A stretch of 64,000 bases of DNA from Heterodontus francisci. Taxonomy: Eukaryota. The stretch covers positions 123,241,593 to 123,305,592 of the forward strand of contig NC_090378.1 in NCBI RefSeq assembly GCF_036365525.1. The letters run 5' to 3'. The position numbers and the translations under genes are program-made. The notes below the pieces were generated by a model. The model did not search any database. It was given only the letters and a program-made list of their open reading frames with translations, and was not told the origin of the DNA. Positions 1,034 through 17,709 of the stretch are shown in pieces (the first letter of the stretch is position 1; each line of letters opens with the position of its first letter).

Positions 1034-1072
1034 GGATATTGTACAGCCCCTGCACTGGAAGCTGTCAGTGTG
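1034..1072 (+). promoter_or_regulatory. 23-bp-spacer recombination signal sequence of the J segment
   Basis: Nonamer GGATATTGT (1034-1042, 7/9 to GGTTTTTGT), 23-nt spacer starting ACAGCC (1043-1065), heptamer CAGTGTG (1066-1072, 6/7) abutting the J coding sequence. A J with a 23-RSS is the kappa-type configuration. Confidence 0.9.
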
Positions 1073-1107
1073 GTTAACGTTTGGTAAAGGAACCAAGCTC
1101 AGACTGA
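1073..1107 (+). CDS. IGKJ: Immunoglobulin light-chain J segment (kappa / NS4-type), germline, unrearranged
   Basis: Encodes LTFGKGTKLRL (FGxG motif). Phase-1 donor GTAAGT at 1108-1113 splices in frame to the C exon (A|GC = Ser). Confidence 0.95.
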
Positions 1108-1685
1108 GTAAGTAAACCTCAATCCTCCGTTACTAATCCTTTAAATACTGAAACATTCTAAAACACAAATGCTGAATAGTGGAAGGTGTTAGTAAGGAGC
1201 TGCAGTCAATGAAATGGTTCATTGAAGAGCACTGTGTATAACAGGGTGCCCAGCTGTATTTCTTTAGTTACATTCCCCCTTTAACCAACAAGATATAAGT
1301 AACCAACTTTTACCGAGTGTGTAGAGGAGATCTGGACGTTTGCAGACTGTGGTCACATTCCTGCTCCATGGAGTGAAATCCCTCACTAGATTCCTGCCAG
1401 TCTCAGTGTGAGCTCTGGGTCTCTGTCACAGTCTCTGATATAACTGATCTCAGCACCAGCACAGTGAGACACCGAGGTCCCACCTCCCCCAGCTTTAACT
1501 CTGTTCTGTCCACTCCCTGCTTATCTCTTGTCAAAGTTCTGATGACAAACAGTGACAGCAGGGCTCCCAATCCAGTGGCTTCAGTGTTCCAGGGTTTTGG
1601 GGAGACTCTCAGTTGCTTTCTCTTTGGGTGAAGTTCAGGCCAAAATTTATCTCTGAACCGACATTGCTAAAAATGCTCATTTACC

Positions 1686-1845
1686 TCATTGCTGTTTGTG
1701 GGATCTTGCTGTGCACAAATTGTCTGCCACATTTCCTACATTCCAACAGTGACTGCTCTTTAAACAAGTCCTTCATTGTCTGTAAATGACTTTGGGAGGT
1801 CCTGAGGTGTGAAATACTCGATATAAATACAAGTCTTTCTTTTCT
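1686..1845 (+). mobile_element. 3' tail fragment of shark DeuSINE/SacSINE1-like element
   Basis: cattgctgtttgtgggatcttgctgtg...gaggtgtgaaa...aagtctttc matches the tail of the copy at 2255-2640. Confidence 0.6.
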
Positions 1846-2254
1846 TTTTATTAACCGGGAGCTCCCACAATACCCTGTTGATTAAAGCTGAACCCAGCAG
1901 AAAATCCACAGAAAACTGACTAATGTTTGTCTGATTTGTCTGTGTGTTTATTAGACATGACTGAGCAGATAGCAAGAGTTTCAGCAGCAACAAAGGTGTT
2001 ACTCTAGTGCCCCTCCCACTTTCCCCATCGACTTACATAATACTTACGGGGAAAGGGCTCAGCACCTGCCATCGACTGGTTAAATGTCACCCCTCTAGAC
2101 TACAGGCCTCCCGTAATCTGCTCTCCATCTCTCTCCTGAAGGCACTATCTCTGGCTGGGGCACAGCTCCACCCTCCCCAAGTGGCCTCATTCCTCCAAGT
2201 GTGAGCCGGGAGGTTGAGAATGGCAGGCTATTCGACTGTGAGGTTTTAGTGTTG

Positions 2255-2640
2255 TCTCAGTGGGTAACACTCTCACCTCTGAGTCAGAATGTCGTGGCTT
2301 CAGGTCCCACTCCAGAGACTGGAGCACATAATCCAGGCTGACACTGCAGTGCAGTATTGAGGGAATGCTGCACTGTCAGAGGTGCTGTCTTTCAGATGAG
2401 ACAAACTGACGTCTGCCCTCTCAGGTGAATGTAAAGGATCCCACTGCACTATTAGAAGAGCAGGGGAGTTCTCCCCGGTGTCCTGGACAATGTTTATCAC
2501 TCAACCAACACCATTAAAAATCAGATTATCTGCTCAGTATCACTCAGCTGTCTGGGATCTTACTGTGAACAGTTGGCTGTAAAATACTTGAAGATATGCT
2601 GAGGTGGTGACAGGCGCTATAGAAATGCAAGTCTTTCTTT
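2255..2640 (+). mobile_element. tRNA-derived DeuSINE (SacSINE1-like)
   Basis: tRNA-like head followed by the Deu core ggtgctgtctttcagatgag...gtctgccctctcaggtg..aaggatccc..gaagagcaggggagttctccccggtgtcctgg. Confidence 0.75.
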
Positions 2641-3779
2641 GAGGTTGGAGGCTCCTGATCCTGACCCTCGCCCATTGTCCGCACACTCTCACCTTCCAGG
2701 GGTCATGGGATCATTCGGAGCAGTGACCCTGCCTGACCCCAGTGCACTGAGACTAATTATAGCCTCACCCTTGACCTCACCCCAGTGCTGGGCAGGAAGG
2801 TTTTAAATGACATCTAGAACCTTCTACACTGACACCCAACCCTTCTCCATCCCTCCATCCTCCCCCACGTCATCCAACCCTTCTCCATCCCTCCATCCTT
2901 CCCCCCGTCTGAGACTAAACCAGACTGTTCACAGCCTTGGTGTCATATTTCTGACCTCATGTTCCGGCCATCACTAAGACCCCCTATTTCCACCGCAGTA
3001 ACATCACACGACTGTGTCCCTGCTCAGCTCATCTGCTCATCATCTACCTCACTTTCCTCCTTTATCTCCATTTGTGGCTCAGTGTCATATTTCTGTTTTA
3101 TAATGCTCCTGTGAAGCACATTGAGATGTTTTAAATGCTTAATGAGATTAAAGGCGCTATACACCACAGCTGCCACCATGTAATGAGAAGCTTTTTATGT
3201 TGTCTGATGCAACATGAATGAGGTATGTGGAGATCTGGCTGTTGAAGATCTCAAATAGTGGTGCTCACCTCATTAGCATACAAAGATCTTAAAGGTACAT
3301 TATTCTTAAAAGCAATCACTGAACATATAAATACAAGTTATTGTTTTGGTTGTTGTTATTTCTGAAGTGTGTTGAGACAAGTCTGTTCCAGTGTTCCGGA
3401 GAAAGTTCTCCCGATGTGTATGTGTGATCTGAGATTTGTTAACACTGAGCCTGTTTCCTCCAGATGGACTGATCTATAGTTCGAGCTTCCTGTCAGGTTA
3501 ACAGTGTCTTAAAGGGACACTGAGTCTTCAAACACTCTTACTATAACCATTTCAGTGCTGAATTTGTGGTAACCCTTCATTACAGATTTAAAAAACTGTC
3601 CAACACGATTTAACCATCTGAACATCAAATGATTCAATGTATTTATATTTAGACTAACCTTAGCAAGCTAGGCAAAACAGAAGGAAATCAAGAATTAATG
3701 GTTCTCACCTCTAATGGTTAAACACAAACAGGAGTTCATCAACCCAGCTGTCTGTTATCCAATGTGAATTCCAATGTAG

Positions 3780-5100
3780 AAACACCCACAGAGAGACACA
3801 GACGAATATACACATAGACCACTCAAATAGACTCAAAACATACAAATAAACACAGAATACACAAACACACAGCACAGAAATATAAACACACAGAACACAC
3901 AAATATGAACACAGAATTTACAAAAATATATAGAGAACACAGAAGCATAGACATAGAACACAAAAATGCACAGATAATGCAAATATACACTGAAACACAT
4001 AAATACACAAAGAGCACACAAATACACGAAGAACAAAATAATATATATTGTTCCGACCAAGGTGGAAGAAATAAATATTAATTCAGTCCCACTTCTTCAC
4101 GGGTCACAGCTGTTTCTTAGGAATAGAAGGAAAAATAAAATAAATCAGTTTGTCACGTTCTTGATATGAAGTTCTTCAGTTGAATGAGGTGTCCCAGAGT
4201 TGAATAGTCGGATGCCACTCAAAGTCTCTCCAGGAGAAGTTGATGAACAGTCTGTGATGGGTCGGCGTTCAGGGCAATTCGGCTACAGTAGGCGTCACAC
4301 AGGACTTTTGGCAGGGGTGTAGCAACAGGTCTGCTGAGGGCTCACAGCAGCAGTATTGCAGTAGAAGCTTTCTTCAGGTTCCAGGATTTCCCAAAACACA
4401 GCAGGCAACAGGAACCATGCTGGATGCAGGAATTCTTCAGAGACAGGAGGCAATCGGAATCTGCCACCTTTCAAATGCAGGGTTTCTTTTCAAGAGATGC
4501 AAGTTTCCTTTACAGAGAGAGGTCTTTTTTGGTCTTCAACTTTGATCTCAAGGCAGATCAGCAACCAAATTTCAAATGCCTGCTTTTTGTCTAACTCATT
4601 GGATTTTAAAAGGGTCTGAAGTGACAGTAAACCTTCCTGAGCCAATCACATGACCAGACATAGAGTATCCACTGTCATTCAAAGTGATGCTCTGAGGAGG
4701 TCAAAAACCCCTTGGCAGGCTTCCTTGAAACGGTTTGCTTTTCCTATTCTTGTATACAAAGTCAACATCCAAAAATTTCAGCTAGTTGCAGGTGTCCATG
4801 TCCACTGGAAATCCTGTTTTCAATTTTTAAAAACACACAGAATTCTAAGATTTTAGTACAAAAATAAATCTCTTGTAACAATATGCAGAACACACACATA
4901 TACACAGAACAAATAAATATATACTCAGAATACATAAATATTTATAGAACACACAAATATATATAGAACACATAAATACACACACAGAACACACAAATAT
5001 ACACACAGGAAACACAGATATACACAGAATATGCAAAAATGCACAAAGAACACATATACCCACAACACACAAATATATACACCGAGCACACAAACATGCA
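3780..5100. repeat. A/C-rich low-complexity tract (acacaaatatacac-like) upstream of the C exon, split by a solo LTR
   Basis: Direct inspection of 3780-4048 and 4881-5100. Confidence 0.8.
4049..4880. mobile_element. Solo LTR in the J-C intron
   Basis: TGTT...AACA termini flanked by 4-bp TSD ATAT (4045-4048 and 4881-4884). The ttaattcagtccc block is shared with the LTR at 28713. Confidence 0.8.
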
Positions 5101-5130
5101 GTGATTAACAGTTTTTCTCTTCTCTTTCAG

Positions 5131-5459
5131 GCCGAGAGAAGTCTCAACCCACACTGACCCTGCTGCCCCCCTCGGAGGAGGAGGTCAAGGCCAAGGGCAC
5201 TGCCACCCTGGTGTGCCTTGCCGATCACTTCTATCCCGATGAAGTGGGGGTAGAGTGGAAGAAGGACGGTGCAGCCATTTCGGCCGGGGTTCAGACCAGC
5301 AACTACCTGCGAGCTTCGGATAGCACCTACAGTGTCAGCAGCCTGCTGACCCTCTCTGGCTCTGACTGGGAGTCCAACGCCCGCTTCTCCTGTGCCCTGA
5401 TCCATGAGACCCTCTCCTCTCCCCTCAGTAAGAGTGTGAGCAGATCAGAATGTGTGTAG
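5131..5459 (+). CDS. IGKC: Immunoglobulin kappa-type (NS4/type III) light-chain constant exon, intact
   Basis: Acceptor tttttctcttctctttcag. Translation (S)REKSQPTLTLLPPSEEEVKAKGTATLVCLADHFYPDEVGVEWKKDG...STYSVSSLLTLSGSDWESNARFSCALIHETLSSPLSKSVSRSECV* is a C1-set domain with both Cys, Trp, FYP and the penultimate interchain Cys. Confidence 0.97.
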
Positions 5460-5616
5460 AGTGTTAGAGACAGTCCGCAGAGGAGACACAACTTTAAATA
5501 TAACAGGGGTGAGCTGGGAGGATAAAGGTCATTTTCAACACGGAATTTCAACTCTCTTCCTTCTCGTGACTGGGTCTGAGACACTTCTGAGGATCAGGGG
5601 TTAAGGCTCGAAATTG

Positions 5617-5762
5617 GGACAGTGTAGAGGGAGCTTTACTCTGTATCTCACCCGTACTGTACCTGCCCTGGGAGTATTTGATTGGACAATGTAGACGGAG
5701 CTTTACTCTGTATCTAACCCGTACTGGACCTGCCCTGGGAGTGTTTGATTGGACAATGTAGA
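5617..5762. repeat. 67-bp tandem repeat (2.2 copies) in the Ig 3' UTR
   Basis: ggacagtgtagagggagctttactctgtatct..cctgccctgggagtgtttgatt units start at 5617, 5684 and 5751. Confidence 0.9.
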
Positions 5763-5955
5763 CTCGTGATGCCAAGTAAAACCTCTCTAAGATGCTGAAG
5801 ACTGTCAGCTGAGCTAAAATAATGTGAACCTCAGAATTCGCCGCTCAGTAAACCAGACCTCCTTCCTGCTCACTCTGCAGTTACAATTTAAAGTTTAGTC
5901 TCTGTTTAAAGCGACAGGATTCTCATGTTATTGAGAAAATCTCCACAACTGTTTT

Positions 5956-6056
5956 AATAAACCTCCATTCTCCCTGTGAATTTCTCCAGCTACCTCTCGC
6001 TGGGCTGTTTATTCAAGTCTTTTTTCTGTAAATGTAAATCAGTAAAAGGTAATAAA
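5956..6056 (+). terminator. Candidate polyadenylation signals of the light-chain transcript
   Basis: AATAAA at 5956-5961 and 6051-6056, ~500-600 nt after the C stop. Confidence 0.7.
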
Positions 6057-6099
6057 CATTAAGAATATTCAGTAAATGTCTTGGGAGTGCTTTGGAAAT

Positions 6100-6215
6100 G
6101 TCCCACCTTCCTGTCAGCTGATTGGCTGCATTTCAGCAAGTGAATCTGATGATTGGCTGGTTGACCTGTCAATCAATAACATGTCAGAAGCAGAATTGAT
6201 TCATAGCCAATTGTA
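6100..6215. promoter_or_regulatory. Promoter-like motif cluster (NF-Y CCAAT x3, PBX-PREP/MEIS decamer, ETS core)
   Basis: CTGATTGGCTG (~6118), TGATTGGCTGG (~6150), AGCCAAT (~6206), CTGTCAATCA (6166-6175 = TGATTGACAG on minus), CTTCCTG (~6108). Confidence 0.45.
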
Positions 6216-6341
6216 AATCATATTAAAATGATCAGTTTTATCTCAAATCCCTTGAGATTACAAGATTAAAAACAGAAACTGAAAGCAGCTGGAATTAAAT
6301 CATCACAATCCCAGCATTCACACATCACTCTTCACACTGGA

Positions 6342-6379
6342 GGTGTTGGTGTAGCCCCAGCTGGTGGGATCGCACTGTG
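6342..6379 (+). promoter_or_regulatory. Candidate orphan RSS (J orientation) downstream of the C exon
   Basis: GGTGTTGGT (7/9 nonamer) + 22-nt spacer GTAGCCCCAGCTGGTGGGATCG + perfect heptamer CACTGTG. No J reading frame follows. Confidence 0.45.
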
Positions 6380-6564
6380 CACTCTGTGCTGACTGCTGAG
6401 CAATACCTGAAATGAGCCTGGGACAATCTCAGGGCTGGAGGCCACACTCACAATGTTCATTTCTCCCACCTTAACCAATGCCTCATGGTAACAGTACAAA
6501 ACTGAACCAAGTGAGGTCTCAGTTTAGAGAGAGGAGCAGTCAGGGTATCATTGTGTACATGACC

Positions 6565-9500
6565 CTGAGTGTGGGTGTGACTGTTACCCAGTACTGTCTG
6601 TAGGTGAGTGTCTCTGAGTGTGGGGGTGTTACCCAGTACTGTCTGTAGGTGTGTGTCTCTGAGTATGGGTGTGTTACCCAGTACTGTCTGTAGGTGTGTG
6701 TCTCTGAGTGTGGGTGTGTTACCCAGTACTGTCTGTAGGTGTGTGTCTCTGAGTGTGGGTGTGTTACCCAGTACTGTCTGTAGGTGAGTGTCTCTGAGTG
6801 TGGGTGTGTCACCCAGTGCTGTCTGTAGGTGTGTGTCTCTGAGTATGGGTGTCTCACCCAGTACTGTCTGTAGGTGTGTGTCTCTGAGTGTGGGTGTGTC
6901 ACCCAGTACTGTCTGTAGGTGTGTGTCTCTGAGTGTGGGTGTTTTACCCAGTACTGTCTGTAGGTGTGTGTCTCTGAGTGTGGGTGTGTTACCCAGTACT
7001 GTCTGTAGGTGCGTGTCTCTGAGTGTGGATGTGTTACCCAGTACTGTCTGTCAGTGAGTGTCTCTGAATGTGGGTGTGTTACCCAGTACTGTCTGTAGGT
7101 GTGTGTCTCTGAGTGTGGGTGTGTTACCCAGTACTGTCTGCAGGTGCGTGTCTCTGAGTGTGGATGTGTTACCCAGTACTGTCTGTCAGTGAGTGTCTCT
7201 GAATGTGGGTGTGTTACCCAGTACTGTCTGTCAGTGTGTGTCTCTGAGTGTGGGTGTGTTACCCAGGACTGTCTGCAGGTGTGTGTCTCTGAGAGTGGGT
7301 GCGTTCCCCAGTACTGTCTGTAGGTGTGTGTCTCTGAGTGTGGGTGTATTACCCAGTACTGTCTGCAGGTGTGTGTCTCTGAGTGTGGGTGTGTTACCCA
7401 GTACTGTCTGTAGGTGCGTGTCTCTGAGTGTGGATGTGTTACCCAGTACTGTCTGTAGGTGTGTGTCTCTGAGAGTGGGTGCGTTCCCCAGTACTGTCTG
7501 TAGGTGTGTGTCTCTGAGTGTAGGTGTGTCACCCAGTACTGTCTGTCGGTGTGTGTCTCTGAGTGTAGGTGTATTACCCAGTACTGTCTGTAGGTGAGTG
7601 TCTCTGAATGTGGATGTGTTACCCAGTACTGTCTGTCAGTGAGTGTCTCTGAATGTGGGTGTGTTACCCAGTACTGTATGTCAGTGTGTGTCTCTGAGTG
7701 TGGGTGTGTTACCCAGGACTGTCTGCAGGTGAGTGTCTCTGAGAGTGGGTGCGTTCCCCAGTACTGTCTGTAGGTGTGTGTCTCTGAGTGTGGGTGTGTT
7801 ACCCAGTACTGTCTGTAGGTGAGTGTCTCTGAGTGTGGATGTGTTACCCAGTACTGTCTGTCGGTGTGTGTCTCTGAATGTGGGTGTATTACCCAGGACT
7901 GTCTGTAGGTGAGTGTCTCTGAGAGTGGGTGCGTTCCCCAGTGCTGTCTGTAGGTGTGTGTCTCTGAATATGGGTGTATTACCCAGTACTGTCTGTAGGT
8001 GAGTGTCTCTGAGTGTGGGTGTGTTACCCAGGACTGTCTGCAGGTGTGTGTCTCTGAGAGTGGGTGCGTTCCCCAGTACTGTCTGTAGGTGTGTGTCTCT
8101 GAGTGTGGGTGCATTACCCAGTACTGTCTGTAGGTGTGTGTCTCTGAGTGTGGGTGTGTTACCCAGTACTGTCTGTAGGTGTGTGTCTCTGAGTGTGGGT
8201 GTGTTACCCAGTACTGTCTGTAGGTGTGTGTCTCTGAGTGTGGGTGTATTACCCAGTACTGTCTGTAGGTGTGTGTCTCTGAGTGTGGGTGTGTTACCCA
8301 GTACTGTCTGTAGGTGTGTGTCTCTGAGTGTGGGTGTGTTACCCAGTACTGTCTGTAGGTGTGTGTCTCTGAGTGTGGGTGTGTTACTCAGTACTGTCTG
8401 TAGGTGTGTGTCTCTGAATGTGGGTGTATTACCCAGTACTGTCTGTAGGTGTGTGTCTCTGAGTCTGGATGTGTTACCCAGTACTGTCTGCAGGTGAGTG
8501 TCTCTGAGAGTGGGTGCGTTCCCCAGTACTGTCTGTTGGTGTGTGTCTCTGAGTGTAGGTGTGTTACCCAGTACTGTCTGTCGGTGTGTGTCTCTGACTG
8601 TGGGTGTATTACACAGTACTGTCTGTAGGTGAGTGTCTCTGAGTGTGGGTGTGTTACCCAGTACTGTCTGTCGGTGTGTGTCTCTGAGTGTGGGTGTGTT
8701 ACCCAGTACTGTCTGTAGGTGTGTGTCTCAGAGAGTGGATGCGTTCCCCAGTGCTGTCTGTAGGTGTGTGTCTCTGAGTGTGGGTGTGTTACCCAGTACT
8801 GTCTGTAGTTGTGTGTCTCTGAATGTGGGTGTATTACCCAGTACTGTCTGTAGGTGAGTGTCTCTGAGTGTGGGTGTGTTACCCAGGACTGTCTGCAGGT
8901 GTGTGTCTCTGAGAGTGGGTGCGTTCCCCAGTACTGTCTGTAGGTGTGTGTCTCTGAGTGTAGGTGTGTCACCCAGTACTGTCTGTCGGTGTGTGTCTCT
9001 GAGTGTGGGTGTATTACCCAGTACAGTCTGTCAGCGTGTGTCTCTGAGAGTGGGTGCGTTCCCCAGTACTGTCTGTAGGTGTGTGTCTCTGAGTGTGGAT
9101 GTGTTACCCAGTGCTGTCTGTAGGTGCGTGTCTCTGAGTGTGGATGTGTTACCCAGTACTGTCTGTCAGTGAGTGTCTCTGAATGTGGGTGTGTTACCCA
9201 GTACTGTCTGTCAGTGTGTGTCTCTGAGTGTGGGTGTGTTACCCAGAACTGTCTGTAGGTGTGTGTCTCTGAATGTGGGTGTATTACCCAGGACTGTCTG
9301 CAGGTGTGTGTCTCTGAGAGTGGGTGCGTTCCCCAGTACTGTCTGTAGGTGTGTGTCTCTGAGTGTGGGTGTATTACCCAGTACTGTCTGTCAGTGTGTG
9401 TCTCTGAGTGTGGGTGTATTACCCAGTACTGTCTGTAGGTGTGTGTCTCTGAGTGTGGGTGTATTACCCAGTACTGTCTGTAGGTGTGTGTCTCTGAGTG

Positions 9501-12500
9501 TGGGTGTGTTACCCAGTACTGTCTGTAGGTGTGTGTCTCTGAGTGTGGGTGTGTTACCCAGTACTGTCTGTAGGTGTGTGTCTCTGAGTGTGGGTGTGTT
9601 ACCCAGTACTGTCTGTAGGTGTGTGTCTCTGAGAGTGGGTGCGTTCCCCAGTGCTGTCTGTAGGTGAGTGTCTCTGAGTGTGGGTGTGTTACCCAGTACT
9701 GTCTGTAGGTGTGTGTCTCTGAGTGTGGGTGTGTTACCCAGGACTGTCTGCAGGTGTGTGTCTCTGAGAGTGGGTGCGTTCCCCAGTACTGTCTGTAGGT
9801 GTGTGTCTCTGAGTGTAGATGTGTTACCCAGTACTGTCTGCAGGTGAGTGTCTCTGAGAGTGGGTGCGTTCCCCAGTACTGTCTGTAGGTGTGTGTCTCT
9901 GAGTGTAGGTGTGTCACCCAGTACTGTCTGTCGGTGTGTGTCTCTGAGTGTGGGTGTATTACCCAGTACTGTCTGCAGGTGAGTGTCTCTGAATGTGGGT
10001 GCGTTACCCAGTACTGTCTGTAGGTGTGTGTCTCTGAGTGTGGGTGTATTACCCAGTACTGTCTGTCAGTGTGTGTCTCTGAGTGTGGGTGTGTTACCCA
10101 GGACTGTCTGCAGGTGTGTGTCTCTGAGAGTGGGTGCGTTCCCCAGTACTGTCTGTAGGTGTGTGTCTCTGAGTGTGGGTGTGTTACCCAGTACTGTCTG
10201 TAGGTGCGTGTCTCTGAGTGTGGATGTGTTACCCAGTACTGTCTGTCAGTGAGTGTCTCTGAATGTGGGTGTGTTACCCAGTACTGTCTGTAGGTGTGTG
10301 TCTCTGAATGTGGGTGTATTACCCAGGACTGTCTGCAGGTGTGTGTCTCTGAGAGTGGGTGCGTTCCCCAGTACTGTCTGTAGGTGTGTGTCTCTGAGTG
10401 TGGGTGTGTTACCCAGTACTGTCTGTAGGTGCGTGTCTCTGAGTGTGGATGTGTTACCCAGTACTGTCTGTCAGTGAGTGTCTCTGAATGTGGGTGTGTT
10501 ACCCAGTACTGTCTGTAGGTGTGTGTCTCTGAGTGTGGGTGTGTTACCCTGTACTGTCTGTAGGTGTGTGTCTCAGAGAGTGGATGCGTTCCCCAGTGCT
10601 GTCTGTAGGTGTGTGTCTCTGAGTGTGGGTGTGTTACCCAGTACTGTCTGTAGGTGTGTGTCTCTGAATGTGGGTGTATTACCCAGTACTGTCTGTAGGT
10701 GAGTGTCTCTGAGTGTGGGTGTGTTACCCAGGACTGTCTGCAGGTGTGTGTCTCTGAGAGTGGGTGCGTTCACCAGTACTGTCTGTAGGTGTGTGTCTCT
10801 GAGTGTAGGTGTGTCACCCAGTACTGTCTGTCGGTGTGTGTCTCTGAGTGTGGGTGTATTACCCAGTACTGTCTGTCAGTGTGTGTCTCTGAGTGTGGGT
10901 GTGTTACCCAGGACTGTCTGCAGGTGTGTGTCTCTGAGAGTGGGTGCGTTCCCCAGTACTGTCTGTAGGTGTGTGTCTCTGAGTGTGGGTGTGTTACCCA
11001 GTACTGTCTGTAGGTGCGTGTCTCTGAGTGTGGATGTGTTACCCAGTACTGTCTGTCAGTGAGTGTCTCTGAATGTGGGTGTGTTACCCAGTACTGTCTG
11101 TAGGTGCGTGTCTCTGAGTGTGGGTGTGTTACCCAGTACTGTCTGTAGGTGCGTGTCTCTGAGTGTGGATGTGTTACCCAGTACTGTCTGTCAGTGAGTG
11201 TCTCTGAATGTGGGTGTGTTACCCAGTACTGTCTGTCAGTGTGTGTCTCTGAGTGTGGGTGTGTTACCCAGTACTGTCTGTAGGTGTGTGTCTCTGAATG
11301 TGGGTGTATTACCCAGGACTGTCTGCAGGTGTGTGTCTCTGAGAGTGGGTGCGTTCCCCAGTACTGTCTGTAGGTGTGTGTCTCTGAGTGTGGGTGCATT
11401 ACCCAGTACTGTCTGTAGGTGTGTGTCTCTGAGTGTGGGTGTGTTACCCAGTACTGTCTGTAGGTGTGTGTCTCTGAGTGTGGGTGTGTTACCCAGTACT
11501 GTCTGTAGGTGTGTGTCTCTGAGTGTGGGTGTGTTACCCAGTACTGTCTGTAGGTGTGTGTCTCTGAGAGTGGGTGCGTTCCCCAGTGCTGTCTGTAGGT
11601 GTGTGTCTCTGAGTGTGGGTGTGTTACCCAGTACTGTCTGTAGGTGTGTGTCTCTGAATGTGGGTGTATTACCCAGTACTGTCTGTAGGTGTGTGTCTCT
11701 GAGTCTGGATGTGTTACCCAGTACTGTCTGCAGGTGAGTGTCTCTGAGAGTGGGTGCGTTCCCCAGTACTGTCTGTTGGTGTGTGTCTCTGAGTGTAGGT
11801 GTGTTACCCAGTACTGTCTGTCGGTGTGTGTCTCTGAGTGTGGGTGTATTACCCAGTACTGTCTGTAGGTGAGTGTCTCTGAGTGTGGGTGTGTTACCCA
11901 GTACTGTCTGTCGGTGTGTGTCTCTGAGTGTGGGTGTGTTACCCAGTACTGTCTGTAGGTGTGTGTCTCAGAGAGTGGATGCGTTCCCCAGTGCTGTCTG
12001 TAGGTGTGTGTCTCTGAGTGTGGGTGTGTTACCCAGTACTGTCTGTAGTTGTGTGTCTCTGAATGTGGGTGTATTACCCAGTACTGTCTGTAGGTGAGTG
12101 TCTCTGAGTGTGGGTGTGTTACCCAGGACTGTCTGCAGGTGTGTGTCTCTGAGAGTGGGTGCGTTCCCCAGTACTGTCTGTAGGTGTGTGTCTCTGAGTG
12201 TGGATGTGTTACCCAGTACTGTCTGTAGGTGAGTGTCTCTGAGAGTGGGTGCGTTCCCCAGTACTGTCTGTAGGTGTGTGTCTCTGAGTGTAGGTGTGTC
12301 ACCCAGTACTGTCTGTCGGTGTGTGTCTCTGAGTGTGGGTGTATTACCCAGTACTGTCTGTAGGTGAGTGTCTCTGAATGTGGGTGCGTTACCCAGTACT
12401 GTCTGTAGGTGTGTGTCTCTGAGTGTGGGTGTATTACCCAGTACTGTCTGTCAGTGTGTGTCTCTGAGTGTGGGTGTGTTACCCAGGACTGTCTGCAGGT

Positions 12501-15500
12501 GTGTGTCTCTGAGAGTGGGTGCGTTCCCCAGTACTGTCTGTAGGTGTGTGTCTCTGAGTGTGGGTGTGTTACCCAGTACTGTCTGTAGGTGCGTGTCTCT
12601 GAGTGTGGATGTGTTACCCAGTACTGTCTGTCAGTGAGTGTCTCTGAATGTGGGTGTGTTACCCAGTACTGTCTGTAGGTGTGTGTCTCTGAATGTGGGT
12701 GTATTACCCAGGACTGTCTGCAGGTGTGTGTCTCTGAGAGTGGGTGCGTTCCCCAGTACTGTCTGGTAGGTGTGTGTCTCTGAGTGTGGGTGTGTTACCC
12801 AGTACTGTCTGTAGGTGCGTGTCTCTGAGTGTGGATGTGTTACCCAGTACTGTCTGTCAGTGAGTGTCTCTGAATGTGGGTGTGTTACCCAGTACTGTCT
12901 GTAGGTGCGTGTCTCTGAGTGTGGGTGTGTTACCCAGTACTGTCTGTAGGTGCGTGTCTCTGAGTGTGGATGTGTTACCCAGTACTGTCTGTCAGTGAGT
13001 GTCTCTGAATGTGGGTGTGTTACCCAGTACTGTCTGTCAGTGTGTGTCTCTGAGTGTGGGTGTGTTACCCAGTACTGTCTGTAGGTGTGTGTCTCTGAAT
13101 GTGGGTGTATTACCCAGGACTGTCTGCAGGTGTGTGTCTCTGAGAGTGGGTGCGTTCCCCAGTACTGTCTGTAGGTGTGTGTCTCTGAGTGTGGGTGTAT
13201 TACCCAGTACTGTCTGTAGGTGTGTGTCTCTGAGTGTGGGTGTATTACCCAGTACTGTCTGTAGGTGTGTGTCTCTGAGTGTGGGTGTATTACCCAGTAC
13301 TGTCTGTAGGTGTGTGTCTCTGAGTGTGGGTGTATTACCCAGTACTGTCTGTAGGTGTGTGTCTCTGAGTGTGGGTGTGTTACCCAGTACTGTCTGTAGG
13401 TGAGTGTCTCTGAGAGTGGGTGCGTTCCCCAGTACTGTCTGTAGGTGTGTGTCTCTGAGTGTAGGTGTGTCACCCAGTACTGTCTGTCGGTGTGTGTCTC
13501 TGAGTGTGGGTGTATTACCCAGTACTGTCTGTAGGTGAGTGTCTCTGAATGTGGGTGTGTTACCCAGTACTGTCTGTAGGTGTGTGTCTCTGAGTGTGGG
13601 TGTATTACCCAGTACTGTCTGTAGGTGTGTGTCTCTGATTGCGGGTGTGTTACCCAGTACTGTCTGTAGGTGTGTGTCTCTGAGAGTGGGTGCGTTCCCC
13701 AGTACTGTCTGTAGGTGTGTGTCTCTGAGTGTGGGTGTGTTACCCAGTACTGTCTGTAGGTGTGTGTCTCTGAGTGTGGGTGTGGTACCCAGTACTGTCT
13801 GTAGGTGAGTGTCTCTGGGTGTGGGTGCGTTACCCAGTACTGTCTGTATGTGTGTGTCTCTGAGTGTAGGTGTGTCACCCAGTACTGTCTGTCGGTGTGT
13901 GTCTCTGAGTGTGGGTGTATTACCCAGTACTGTCTGTAGGTGAGTGTCTCTGAATGTGGGTGCGTTACCCAGTACTGTCTGTAGGTGTGTGTCTCTGAGT
14001 GTGGGTGTATTACCCAGTACTGTCTGTCAGTGTGTGTCTCTGAGTGTGGGTGTGTTACCCAGGACTGTCTGCAGGTGTGTGTCTCTGAGAGTGGGTGTGT
14101 TACCCAGTACTGTCTGTAGGTGCGTGTCTCTGAGTGTGGATGTGTTACCCAGTACTGTCTGTCAGTGAGTGTCTCTGAATGTGGGTGTTTTACCCAGTAC
14201 TGTCTGTAGGTGTGTGTCTCTGAATGTGGGTGTATTACCCAGGACTGTCTGCAGGTGTGTGTCTCTGAGAGTGGGTGCGTTCCCCAGTACTGTCTGTAGG
14301 TGTGTGTCTCTGAGTGTGGGTGTGTTACCCAGTACTGTCTGTAGGTGCGTGTCTCTGAGTGTGGATGTGTTACCCAGTACTGTCTGTCAGTGAGTGTCTC
14401 TGAATGTGGGTGTGTTACCCAGTACTGTCTGTAGGTGTGTGTCTCTGAGTGTGGGTGTGTTACCCTGTGCTGTCTGTAGGTGTGTGTCTCAGAGAGTGGA
14501 TGCGTTCCCCAGTGCTGTCTGTAGGTGTGTGTCTCTGAGTGTGGGTGTGTTACCCAGTACTGTCTGTAGGTGTGTGTCTCTGAATGTGGGTGTATTACCC
14601 AGTACTGTCTGTAGGTGAGTGTCTCTGAGTGTGGGTGTGTTACCCAGGACTGTCTGCAGGTGTGTGTCTCTGAGAGTGGGTGCGTTCCCCAGTACTGTCT
14701 GTAGGTGTGTGTCTCTGAGTGTAGGTGTGTCACCCAGTACTGTCTGTAGGTGTGTGTCTCTGAGTGTGGGTGTATTACCCAGTACTGTCTGTCAGTGTGT
14801 GTCTCTGAGTGTGGGTGTGTTACCCAGGACTGTCTGCAGGTGTGTGTCTCTGAGAGTGGGTGCGTTCCCCAGTACTGTCTGTAGGTGTGTGTCTCTGAGT
14901 GTGGGTGTGTTACCCAGTACTGTCTGTAGGTGCGTGTCTCTGAGTGTGGATGTGTTACCCAGTACTGTCTGTCAGTGAGTGTCTCTCAATGTGGGTGTGT
15001 TACCCAGTACTGTCTGTAGGTGCGTGTCTCTGAGTGTGGGTGTGTTACCCAGTACTGTCTGTAGGTGCGTGTCTCTGAGTGTGGATGTGTTACCCAGTAC
15101 TGTCTGTCAGTGAGTGTCTCTGAATGTGGGTGTGTTACCCAGTACTGTCTGTCAGTGTGTGTCTCTGAGTGTGGGTGTGTTACCCAGTACTGTCTGTAGG
15201 TGTGTGTCTCTGAATGTGGGTGTATTACCCAGGACTGTCTGCAGGTGTGTGTCTCTGAGAGTGGGTGCGTTCCCCAGTACTGTCTGTAGGTGTGTGTCTC
15301 TGAGTGTGGGTGTATTACCCAGTACTGTCTGTCAGTGTGTGTCTCTCAGTGTGGGTGTATTACCCAGTACTGTCTGTAGGTGTGTGTCTCTGAGTGTGGG
15401 TGTATTACCCAGTACTGTCTGTCGGTGTGTGTCTCTGAGTGTGGGTGTGTTACCCAGTACTGTCTGTAGGTGTGTGTCTCTGAGTGTAGGTGTGTTACCC

Positions 15501-17709
15501 AGTACTGTCTGTAGGTGTGTGTCTCTGAGTGTGGGTGTGTTACCCAGTACTGTCTGTAGGTGTGTGTCTCTGAGAGTGGGTGCGTTCCCCAGTACTGTCT
15601 GTAGGTGTGTGTCTCTGAGTGTGGATGTGTTACCCAGTACTGTCTGTAGGTGAGTGTCTCTGAGAGTGGGTGCGTTCCCCAGTACTGTCTGTAGGTGTGT
15701 GTCTCTGAGTGTAGGTGTGTCACCCAGTACTGTCTGTCGGTGTGTGTCTCTGAGTGTGGGTGTATTACCCAGTACTGTCTGTAGGTGAGTGTCTCTGAAT
15801 GTGGGTGCGTTACCCAGTACTGTCTGTAGGTGTGTGTCTCTGAGTGTGGGTGTATTACCCAGTGCTGTCTGTCAGTGTGTGTCTCTGAGTGTGGGTGTGT
15901 TACCCAGGACTGTCTGCAGGTGTGTGTCTCTGAGAGTGGGTGCGTTCCCCAGTACTGTCTGTAGGTGTGTGTCTCTGAGTGTGGGTGTGTTACCCAGTAC
16001 TGTCTGTAGGTGCGTGTCTCTGAGTGTGGATGTGTTACCCAGTACTGTCTGTCAGTGAGTGTCTCTGAATGTGGGTGTGTTACCCAGTACTGTCTGTAGG
16101 TGTGTGTCTCTGAATGTGGGTGTATTACCCAGGACTGTCTGCAGGTGTGTGTCTCTGAGAGTGGGTGCGTTCCCCAGTACTGTCTGTAGGTGTGTGTCTC
16201 TGAGTGTGGGTGTGTTACCCAGTACTGTCTGTAGGTGCGTGTCTCTGAGTGTGGATGTGTTACCCAGTACTGTCTGTCAGTGAGTGTCTCTGAATGTGGG
16301 TGTGTTACCCAGTACTGTCTGTAGGTGCGTGTCTCTGAGTGTGGGTGTGTTACCCAGTACTGTCTGTAGGTGCGTGTCTCTGAGTGTGGATGTGTTACCC
16401 AGTACTGTCTGTCAGTGAGTGTCTCTTAATGTGGGTGTGTTACCCAGTACTGTCTGTCAGTGTGTGTCTCTGAGTGTGGGTGTGTTACCCAGTACTGTCT
16501 GTAGGTGTGTGTCTCTGAATGTGGGTGTATTACCCAGGACTGTCTGCAGGTGTGTGTCTCTGAGAGTGGGTGCGTTCCCCAGTACTGTCTGTAGGTGTGT
16601 GTCTCTGAGTGTGGGTGTATTACCCAGTACTGTCTGTAGGTGTGTGTCTCTGAGTGTGGGTGTATTACCCAGTACTGTCTGTAGGTGTGTGTCTCTGAGT
16701 GTGGGTGTATTACCCAGTACTGTCTGTAGGTGCGTGTCTCTGAGTGTGGATGTGTTACCCAGTACTGTCTGTCAGTGAGTGTCTCTGAATGTGGGTGTGT
16801 TACCCAGTACTGTCTGTAGGTGAGTGTCTCTGAGAGTGGGTGCGTTCCCCAGTACTGTCTGTAGGTGTGTGTCTCTGAGTGTAGGTGTGTCACCCAGTAC
16901 TGTCTGTCGGTGTGTGTCTCTGAGTGTGGGTGTATTACCCAGTACTGTCTGTAGGTGAGTGTCTCTGAATGTGGGTGCGTTACCCAGTACTGTCTGTAGG
17001 TGTGTGTCTCTGAGTGTGGGTGTATTACCCAGTACTGTCTGTAGGTGTGTGTCTCTGATTGCGGGTGTGTTACCCAGTACTGTCTGTAGGTGTGTGTCTC
17101 TGAGAGTGGGTGCGTTCCCCAGTACTGTCTGTAGGTGTGTGTCTCTGAGTGTGGGTGTGTTACCCAGTACTGTCTGTAGGTGTGTGTCTCTGAGTGTGGG
17201 TGTGGTACCCAGTACTGTCTGTAGGTGAGTGTCTCTGGGTGTGGGTGCGTTACCCAGTACTGTCTGTAGGTGAGTGTCTCTGAGTGTGGGTGTGTCACCC
17301 AGTACTGTCTGTAGGTGTGTCTCTGAGTGTGGGTGTATTACCCAGTACTGTCTGTAGGTGAGTGTCTCTGAATGTGGGTGCGTTACCCAGTCCTGTCTGT
17401 AGGTGAGTGTCTCTGGGTGTGGGTGCGTTACCCAGTACTGTCTGTAGGTGAGTGTCTCTGAATGTGGGTGCGTTACCCAGTACTGTCTGTAGGTGAGTGT
17501 CTCTGGGTGTGGGTGCGTTACCCAGTACTGTCTGTAGGTGAGTGTCTCTGAGTGTGGGTGTGTCACCCAGTACTGTCTGTAGGTGTGTCTCTGAGTGTGG
17601 GTGTATTACCCAGTACTGTCTGTAGGTGAGTGTCTCTGAATGTGGGTGCGTTACCCAGTACTGTCTGTAGGTGAGTGTCTCTGAGTGTGGGTGTGTTACC
17701 CAGTACTGT
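6565..17709. repeat. 45-bp tandem satellite, ~247 copies, with higher-order duplications
   Basis: Consensus GTTACCCAGTACTGTCTGTAGGTGTGTGTCTCTGAGTGTGGGTGT. One 1-bp insertion (~12766) and two 2-bp deletions (~17315, ~17585). Confidence 0.98.

What the first reader, a model, noticed from the sequence alone, without database searches (positions are those of the whole stretch)
6342..6379. Candidate kappa-deleting element: orphan J-oriented RSS just 3' of a shark C-kappa exon
Seen: ~880 bp after the C stop lies GGTGTTGGT-22nt-CACTGTG, a perfect heptamer with a 7/9 nonamer, in the same orientation as the J RSS and with no FGxG/J frame or splice donor after it. Its spacer (GTAGCCCCAGC..TGG) resembles this locus's own J spacer (ACAGCCCCTGCACTGG), suggesting descent from a J signal. 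Established: in mammals the KDE/RS is a coding-less 23-type RSS downstream of C-kappa that recombines with V-kappa or an intronic heptamer to delete C-kappa. Inference: this could be a cluster-inactivation or receptor-editing switch in a shark V-J-C minilocus, where a single J leaves no room for ordinary nested editing. I know of no description in cartilaginous fish. Caveats: the spacer is 22 not 23, and the nonamer A-tract is broken (ACCAACACC).
Basis: partly seen in the sequence, partly recalled or inferred. Interest (0 to 1): 0.8.

Follow-up and report, generated by a model that had tools for sequence, protein, structure and literature searches.

The report
RSS-like motif behind shark kappa constant exon
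A well-formed look-alike of an antibody-gene cutting signal really sits just behind a shark kappa constant exon, placed so that cutting there could delete the exon, but nothing shows that it is used, so it is most likely a silent by-stander.

Summary
The motif is real. GGTGTTGGT, a 22-nt spacer and CACTGTG lie at 6342-6379, in J-type orientation, 882 nt after the C-kappa stop. That is about 270-300 nt beyond the mRNA end. No J or V coding adjoins it. It is the best 23-type RSS-like site in the 64-kb window, and by consensus count it equals or beats the cluster's own J signal.

It is not in a dispersed repeat. Its flank occurs in another species at about 87% identity with the spacer length unchanged.

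The case for use by the recombinase is weak:
- Nonamer position 6, one of five critical RSS positions in mammals, is broken.
- Similarity to the J spacer is marginal (p about 0.03), and the flanks show no homology.
- Contig depths suggest that only part of the kappa clusters carry this flank.
- No joints were seen at the heptamer border, although contigs could hardly show them.

This scan had already noted the same motif at other kappa clusters of this genome. RSS-like elements 3' of CL were proposed earlier for zebrafish.

Verdict: a cryptic signal inherited with its flank. A true deleting element is not excluded (about 0.12).

The parts
6342..6350 (+). nonamer-like GGTGTTGGT (7 of 9; read as ACCAACACC, positions 3 and 6 are C instead of A)
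6351..6372 (+). 22-nt spacer; contains an E-box CAGCTG at 6358-6363; the first 11 nt share 8 with the J spacer
6373..6379 (+). perfect heptamer CACTGTG; a cut would fall between 6379 and 6380
6380..6581 (+). flank on the 'coding' side of the heptamer: no J frame, no V remnant on either strand, unique sequence up to the satellite
1034..1072 (+). the cluster's own J signal: GGATATTGT, 23 nt, CAGTGTG (nonamer 7/9, heptamer 6/7)
1073..1113 (+). J segment (FGKGTKLRL) with splice donor GTAAGT
   Evidence: J-C spliced loose end in RNA contigs
1460..1466 (+). isolated V-type heptamer CACAGTG in the J-C intron (nonamer at 12 nt only 4/9): the only possible in-cluster partner after V-J joining
5131..5459 (+). 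kappa C exon with stop TAG at 5457-5459; 105 of 108 residues equal to a Heterodontus francisci kappa chain (P0004)
5956..6056 (+). two AATAAA signals (5956, 6051); RNA contig depth falls from about 1e6 to 1.7e4 at 6031-6079 and to 50 or less beyond 6080
6582..17709 (+). 11-kb satellite of 45-nt units that bounds the unique 3' flank

Best explanation
This is a cryptic 23-type recombination-signal look-alike. It sits in a low-copy 3' flank about 0.4-0.7 kb long, beyond the poly(A) site, and that flank was inherited with cluster duplication. A subset of the kappa clusters of this shark (probably Heterodontus francisci) carry it, and so does a second species. Because it lies in recombinase-accessible chromatin next to an active V-J-C cluster, RAG could occasionally pair it with the V 12-RSS and delete J and C. 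I infer that any such events are rare by-products rather than a selected switch. What is shown: the motif, its position and orientation, the absence of adjoining coding sequence, its place outside the mRNA, its low copy number, and the presence of the flank in another species. What is inferred: lack of selected function, and occasional RAG use.
For: Nonamer position 6 is C. Positions 5 and 6 of the nonamer and CAC of the heptamer are the five critical nucleotides in mammals (PMC212687, Introduction passage). Sequences that pass RSS scoring thresholds occur about once per 500-720 bp in human and mouse, and they predict in vivo cutting poorly (PMC2896083, passages). A DNA contig covering 6052-6560 differs from the window at only 2 places, so the paralogues are too alike for the motif's identity among them to mean anything. 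Depth of the flank contig is 34. That compares with 91.6 for the C-exon contig and 115-139 at 6080-6177. A more abundant variant (depth 78.4 in DNA) ends at about 6178-6179, and its RNA counterpart (depth 50.7) leaves the window there. All three contigs that reach the heptamer cross it in germline form: X1 record 8, X2 record 23 and X16 record 16. No extended homology to the J region was found.
Against: By consensus count the motif is as good as or better than the true J signal of the same cluster. That J signal itself breaks a 'critical' position (nonamer position 5 is T), so the mammalian rule may not bind here. The chance of such a site in this 1.1 kb and this orientation is about 0.0014. 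The spacer length is kept in another species whose flank is 13% diverged: all 7 gap letters of that contig lie outside 6342-6379. The spacer resembles the J spacer at p about 0.03. Absence of junctions in contigs has no weight, because contigs drop rare variants.
Confidence: 0.6

Rival explanations
1. It is a working cluster-deleting element, a functional analogue of mammalian KDE/RS. RAG pairs the 22-nt-spacer signal at 6342-6379 with the V 12-RSS, which removes J and C. After V-J joining it would pair instead with the intronic heptamer at 1460-1466, which removes C. Either event silences a non-productive or self-reactive kappa cluster.
For: It has the right place, orientation and spacer class, a perfect heptamer and no coding segment. 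It is the best 23-type site in 64 kb. One perfect V-type heptamer stands in the intron. The flank and the spacer length are kept in a second species. First readers noted the same 38-nt motif at other clusters (unchecked notes, not independent).
Against: Nonamer position 6 is broken. No junction was seen (low power). The flank seems present in only part of the clusters. The intronic heptamer has no nonamer (4/9), and one perfect heptamer in 4 kb is about what chance gives: 19 per 128 kb of both strands works out to roughly 0.6 expected. Selective conservation is unmeasured.
Confidence: 0.12
2. It is a relic of a real signal, for example a duplicated J signal whose J decayed or a product of germline RAG activity, now without function.
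For: Spacer likeness to the J spacer: 8 of the first 11 nt, with 3.4% of 5000 shuffles scoring as well. Same orientation and spacer class as J. Germline RAG activity in shark light-chain clusters is on record (abstract of PMC2193156 as listed).
Against: Local alignment of 900-1300 against 6200-6581 gives no homology beyond the signal: score 20 against a shuffle mean of 18.9, and 35% of 300 shuffles score as well. There is no J-like frame after the heptamer. There is no V-type 12-RSS upstream in 5460-6342 that would mark an inserted signal-ended fragment.
Confidence: 0.13
3. The conserved block is a 3' regulatory region (an enhancer). The RSS resemblance is incidental to selected transcription-factor sites such as the E-box inside the spacer.
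For: Two exact TGATTGGCTG copies lie 31 nt apart at 6119 and 6150, the only exact copies in the window. GAAACTGAAAGCAGCTG lies at 6275-6291. E-boxes stand at 6115, 6286 and 6358. The block 5735-6474 is kept at 87% in another species. That these resemble NF-Y, IRF and E2A sites is recalled knowledge, not a test.
Against: No functional or comparative test was made. With one mismatch the first motif is no more frequent than chance: 7 matches against 6.1 expected. The second pattern was written after seeing the site. This reading does not explain a perfect heptamer at the right distance from a nonamer-like run.
Confidence: 0.15

Closest known systems
Mammalian kappa-deleting element / recombining sequence (KDE/RS)
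   Same: A coding-less heptamer-spacer-nonamer signal in J-type orientation 3' of C-kappa, able to pair with a V-kappa 12-RSS or an isolated heptamer in the J-C intron (mechanism as described in PMC3014032, passage; abstract of PMC2118853 as listed).
   Different: It lies 0.9 kb from C, not tens of kb (the mammalian distance is recalled). The spacer is 22 nt. Nonamer position 6 is broken. No rearrangement is shown. Sequence homology to KDE/RS was not tested.
RSS-like elements in the 3' region of zebrafish CL genes (Zimmerman, Romanowski and Maddox 2011)
   Same: Heptamer/nonamer look-alikes 3' of CL in cluster-type fish light-chain loci, proposed as kappa-like recombining/deleting elements. 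I saw the title in reference lists and one sentence of the review PMC3570791.
   Different: Those are in a teleost, not a cartilaginous fish. The paper itself is not held, so their sequence, spacer and evidence could not be compared. The same group's 2008 paper had found no Kde/RS homologues (PMC3014032, passage).
Cryptic RSS (cRSS) outside gene segments
   Same: RSS-like by sequence, no adjoining gene segment, function not shown. Such sites are very common by scoring thresholds: about 1 per 500-720 bp (PMC2896083).
   Different: Its consensus quality is well above the usual cRSS (0.16 expected per 64 kb). It lies inside an active antigen-receptor cluster, in the one orientation that would delete C.
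Embedded 3' cryptic heptamer of VH genes used in VH replacement
   Same: A conserved cryptic signal that allows secondary RAG events at an already joined gene (abstract of PMC3526766 as listed).
   Different: That signal lies inside V coding sequence and replaces V. This one lies behind C and would delete it.

Membership tests
KDE/RS-type deleting element | Lies 3' of the kappa C exon, outside the mature mRNA | tested here: met
   It starts 882 nt after the stop. RNA contig depth drops from about 1e6 to 50 or less by 6080.
KDE/RS-type deleting element | Heptamer, 23-type spacer and nonamer in J-type orientation, with no coding segment beside the heptamer | tested here: met
   Perfect heptamer, 22-nt spacer, 7/9 nonamer. 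No J frame. No V remnant: of 27 kappa proteins, 0 hit 6380-6760 at E<1, and 2 stop-free pieces gave 0 Pfam families.
KDE/RS-type deleting element | The five critical RSS positions intact (heptamer CAC, nonamer positions 5 and 6) | tested here: not met
   CAC and nonamer position 5 are intact, but position 6 is C. The rule comes from PMC212687. The cluster's own J signal also breaks position 5.
KDE/RS-type deleting element | Somatic joining to a V 12-RSS or an intronic heptamer in B-lineage cells | tested here: inconclusive
   No joint or loose end at 6379/6380 among those listed. 106 joints and 638 loose ends were not shown, and all 4 runs were contigs.
KDE/RS-type deleting element | Heptamer and nonamer conserved above the flank across species and paralogues | tested here: inconclusive
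   The flank is present in organism C at 87% identity, with no indel in the motif. Its substitutions were among 118 rows not shown. The paralogue contig differs at only 2 of 509 places, so it has no power.
KDE/RS-type deleting element | Sequence homology to mammalian KDE/RS | not tested
Cryptic RSS | RSS-like sequence without a gene segment and without shown use | tested here: met
Dispersed repeat or transposon fragment | Many copies genome-wide | tested here: not met
   At 6276-6560 one DNA contig of depth 34 was laid, against depths of 1e5-1e7 over the true repeat at 5590-5785. There is no second copy in the window.

The most novel reading that the evidence does not exclude
The motif is a true cluster-deleting element of cartilaginous fish. 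In developing B cells RAG joins the V 12-RSS, or the intronic heptamer at 1460-1466, to the signal at 6373-6379 and removes J-C or C. This silences single kappa clusters that otherwise could not be edited. RAG-mediated locus inactivation behind C would then date back to the first jawed vertebrates, and part of the shark kappa clusters would be 'erasable'.
Probability: 0.12. Interest if true: 0.75.

Novelty: new member of a known kind. Interest (0 to 1): 0.4.

Why it matters
Shark light-chain genes are single V-J-C clusters, so a bad or self-reactive joint cannot be replaced by nested rearrangement. How such clusters are silenced is an open question. A signal behind C that deletes the constant exon would give sharks the locus-killing step known from mammalian kappa, and would move its origin to the base of jawed vertebrates. 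The motif defines an exact and cheap test: PCR or long reads across V or 1466 to 6380 in lymphoid DNA against non-lymphoid DNA. If the motif is only a cryptic signal, it still marks a likely site of off-target RAG breaks inside an active antibody locus.

Tried and rejected
Inverted V remnant. Read on the minus strand, the heptamer flank ends in ..RYCSAVSTE or ..GLQP*D..QQS, which looked like the 3' end of a V gene with a 23-type signal. It was rejected: tblastn of 27 kappa chains against the window hit only J and C, with 0 hits at 6380-6760 at E<1, and 2 stop-free pieces (22 and 48 aa) gave 0 Pfam families at E up to 10. V genes of lambda, sigma, TCR or VH type were not tested as proteins.

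Decayed J duplicate. No FGxG frame follows the heptamer, and the flanks show no homology to the J region.

Inserted signal-ended fragment (RAG transposition). There is no V-type 12-RSS at 6/7 and 6/9 or better in 5460-6342.

D-like unit. A weak V-type 12-RSS look-alike stands at 6449-6476 (6/7, 6/9), but it is one of 11 such sites in the window, so I take it as chance.

Dispersed repeat. Rejected.

Paralogue within the window. There is none.

Fetching paralogous and orthologous 3' flanks. The C exon was searched alone (3 proteins at E<=1e-10 among 10 candidates). A second search used region 40-149 of the database protein P0001 and gave 26 proteins at E<=1e-15 among 40 candidates.

Papers not held: PMC2736800, the 2017 J Immunol shark isotype-exclusion paper (by DOI), and PMC3129705. 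Zimmerman et al. 2011 is known to me only by its title and one review sentence. Supplements were not opened, and any RSS tables in them could bear on the zebrafish comparison.

Full report
WHAT IS THERE. The left part of the window holds the J-C part of one shark kappa-type light-chain cluster.
- The J signal is at 1034-1072 (GGATATTGT, 23 nt, CAGTGTG).
- The J segment follows (FGKGTKLRL, donor GTAAGT ending at 1113).
- A 4-kb intron separates J from the C exon at 5131-5459, which ends in stop TAG at 5457-5459.
- The C exon translated alone matches shark kappa chains. It equals a Heterodontus francisci kappa chain (P0004) at 105 of 108 residues, so the genome is probably the horn shark.
- I searched the C exon by itself and did not join J and C into a spliced model.
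- No V gene lies in the window. A 74-nt-unit satellite and an N run precede J, and an 11-kb satellite of 45-nt units starts at 6582.
- The rest of the window holds long ORFs that look like retrotransposon genes (not tested further).

GGTGTTGGT (6342-6350), 22 nt of spacer and CACTGTG (6373-6379) stand in the same orientation as the J signal. The nonamer starts 882 nt after the stop.
- After the heptamer, none of the three + frames has a J-like FGxG, and all have stops.
- The bare heptamer is not enriched in the window: 19 matches against 28.5 expected. The full motif, however, is rare.
- With a perfect heptamer, a nonamer of at least 7/9 and a spacer of 22-24 on both strands, it is the only site in 64 kb.
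- Allowing one heptamer mismatch outside CAC adds exactly one further site, the true J signal.
- In 300 Markov simulations the mean was 0.16 sites per window. The expectation for this 1.1-kb interval and this orientation is 0.0014.
- That figure is post hoc. By published scoring thresholds, cryptic signals occur about once per 500-720 bp in human and mouse, and they predict cutting in vivo poorly (PMC2896083, passages).

WHAT IT IS NOT.
- It is not the signal of a hidden gene segment. The minus-strand reading of the flank looked faintly V-like. However, 27 kappa chains hit only J and C in the window, and two stop-free pieces gave no Pfam family.
- It is not in a dispersed repeat. The window has no second copy. 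In the laid DNA run only one contig (depth 34) covers 6276-6560, whereas the true repeat at 5590-5785 reaches depths of 1e5 to 1e7.
- It is not part of the mRNA. Run X1 is RNA, because its contigs carry the J-C splice at 5131. Its depth is about 1e6 over C and the 3' UTR. It falls to 1.7e4 at 6031-6079, behind the AATAAA signals at 5956 and 6051, to 50 at 6080-6177, and to 1-6 beyond.

RELATION TO THE J SIGNAL. The spacers share AGCCCC.GC..TGG. The global score is reached by 3.4% of 5000 shuffles and by 2.7% of 5000 random window 22-mers. The flanks show no homology: local score 20 against a shuffle mean of 18.9. Descent from a J signal is therefore possible but weakly supported.

The one read-laying run (23; runs X1, X2, X9 and X16; window 5100-6560; likeness 80) gave partial answers.
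(a) In the DNA run of the same sample, a 543-nt contig covers 6052-6560 with 2 differences (at 6324 and 6401) and none in the motif. At 0.4% divergence this says nothing about selection.
(b) Depths suggest that the flank is not universal. The flank contig has depth 34, the C-exon contig 91.6, and 6080-6177 has 115-139. A more abundant variant ends at about 6178-6179 as a short DNA contig (depth 78.4). Its RNA counterpart, contig X1 record 7 (depth 50.7), leaves the window there with 61 unlike letters. The tool warns that holes prove nothing, so this is only a hint.
(c) In another species (organism C), an 856-nt contig follows 5735-6474 with 96 other letters and 7 gap letters, which is 87% identity. 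All 7 gap letters are listed and lie outside 6342-6379, so the 22-nt spacing is kept. The substitutions of that contig were among 118 rows not shown, so the state of its heptamer and nonamer is unknown. Even full identity of the 16 positions would have p of only about 0.1 at 13% divergence.

USE. No joint or loose end at 6379/6380 is among those listed, and the three contigs that reach the heptamer cross it in germline form. All runs were contigs, which drop rare variants, and 106 joints and 638 loose ends were not shown. This is absence of evidence only.

SIGNAL QUALITY. Read as ACCAACACC, the nonamer has C at positions 3 and 6. In mammals the heptamer CAC and nonamer positions 5 and 6 are nearly invariant, and mutating any of them essentially abolishes recombination (PMC212687, Introduction passage). 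This counts against efficient use. The cluster's own J signal, however, has T at nonamer position 5 and a 6/7 heptamer. Either the rule is looser here or this cluster's J is itself weak. A 22-nt spacer is within the accepted 23 +/- 1 (PMC2896083, abstract).

MECHANISM IF USED. By the 12/23 rule the motif could pair with the V 12-RSS. The V and its 12-RSS are reported only in earlier notes of this scan, and I did not see them. That pairing would excise J and C.
- After V-J joining, the single V signal is gone.
- The only in-cluster partner then is an isolated V-type heptamer at 1460-1466, whose nonamer at 12 nt matches 4/9. One perfect heptamer in a 4-kb intron is about the chance number.

WHAT ELSE THE BLOCK MAY BE. 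Between the poly(A) site and the motif lie two exact TGATTGGCTG copies 31 nt apart, GAAACTGAAAGCAGCTG at 6275-6291 and three E-boxes, one of them inside the spacer. This looks like a regulatory block, but it is untested.

COMPARISON WITH WHAT IS KNOWN. The layout works like mammalian KDE/RS as described in PMC3014032 (passage) and in the abstract of PMC2118853 as listed. Membership is not established: one defining feature (the critical nonamer position) is not met, and use, conservation and homology are untested or inconclusive.
- For zebrafish, RSS-like heptamers and nonamers in the 3' region of most CL genes were reported and likened to KDE (review PMC3570791, passage). The primary paper, Zimmerman et al. 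2011, is not held.
- For cartilaginous fish I found no description. 'kappa deleting element' with 'shark' returned 4 papers. 'deleting element' with 'cartilaginous fish' returned 5. 'horn shark' with kappa and RSS returned 2. In the passages I read, none reports such an element in a shark. Most subscription papers are not in the library.

EARLIER NOTES. This scan had already noted the same kind of 38-nt motif behind C-kappa at other clusters of this genome (s1-873545, s1-873712, s1-872288). One follow-up reached the reading I also reach: a cryptic signal inherited with its flank. These notes are not independent evidence.

VERDICT. The interpretation can be neither confirmed nor refuted with the tools that were open. 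The most likely reading is a cryptic signal (0.6). A true deleting element keeps about 0.12.

Noticed in passing
window 6115-6291: Possible 3' regulatory block just beyond the poly(A) site: two exact TGATTGGCTG (inverted CCAAT-like) copies at 6119 and 6150, GAAACTGAAAGCAGCTG at 6275-6291, and E-boxes at 6115, 6286 and 6358.
   Followed up: partly
window 6050-6179: A second, more abundant paralogue variant (DNA contig depth 78.4, RNA contig depth 50.7) shares at least 7 differences over 6082-6148. The DNA contig ends at about 6178/6179 and the RNA contig leaves the window sequence there, so kappa clusters seem to fall into at least two 3'-flank families.
   Followed up: partly
window 5590-5785: Very high-copy dispersed repeat (67-nt unit, 2.2 copies here) inside the kappa 3' UTR. 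Depth is 1e5-1e7 in all four runs, including another species.
   Followed up: partly
window 6582-17709: An 11-kb satellite of 45-nt units (247 copies, 90% matches) begins about 200 nt after the motif. Earlier notes describe other large satellites between V and J of these clusters.
   Followed up: no
window 6449-6476: Weak V-type 12-RSS look-alike (CACAATG, 12 nt, ACCTTAACC) 69 nt after the candidate heptamer, giving a D-segment-like layout. It is one of 11 sites of that quality in the window, so probably chance.
   Followed up: partly
proteins P0001 and P0002: Shark kappa cDNA-like proteins are filed in NCBI under Aeromonas veronii and Salmonella enterica, on contigs of 507 and 990 nt. This looks like shark contamination in bacterial assemblies.
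   Followed up: no
window 1034-1072: The cluster's own J signal has T at nonamer position 5 and a 6/7 heptamer, against the mammalian 'critical position' rule. Several predicted kappa proteins of other sharks align through this signal region, because their gene models read it as coding.
   Followed up: partly
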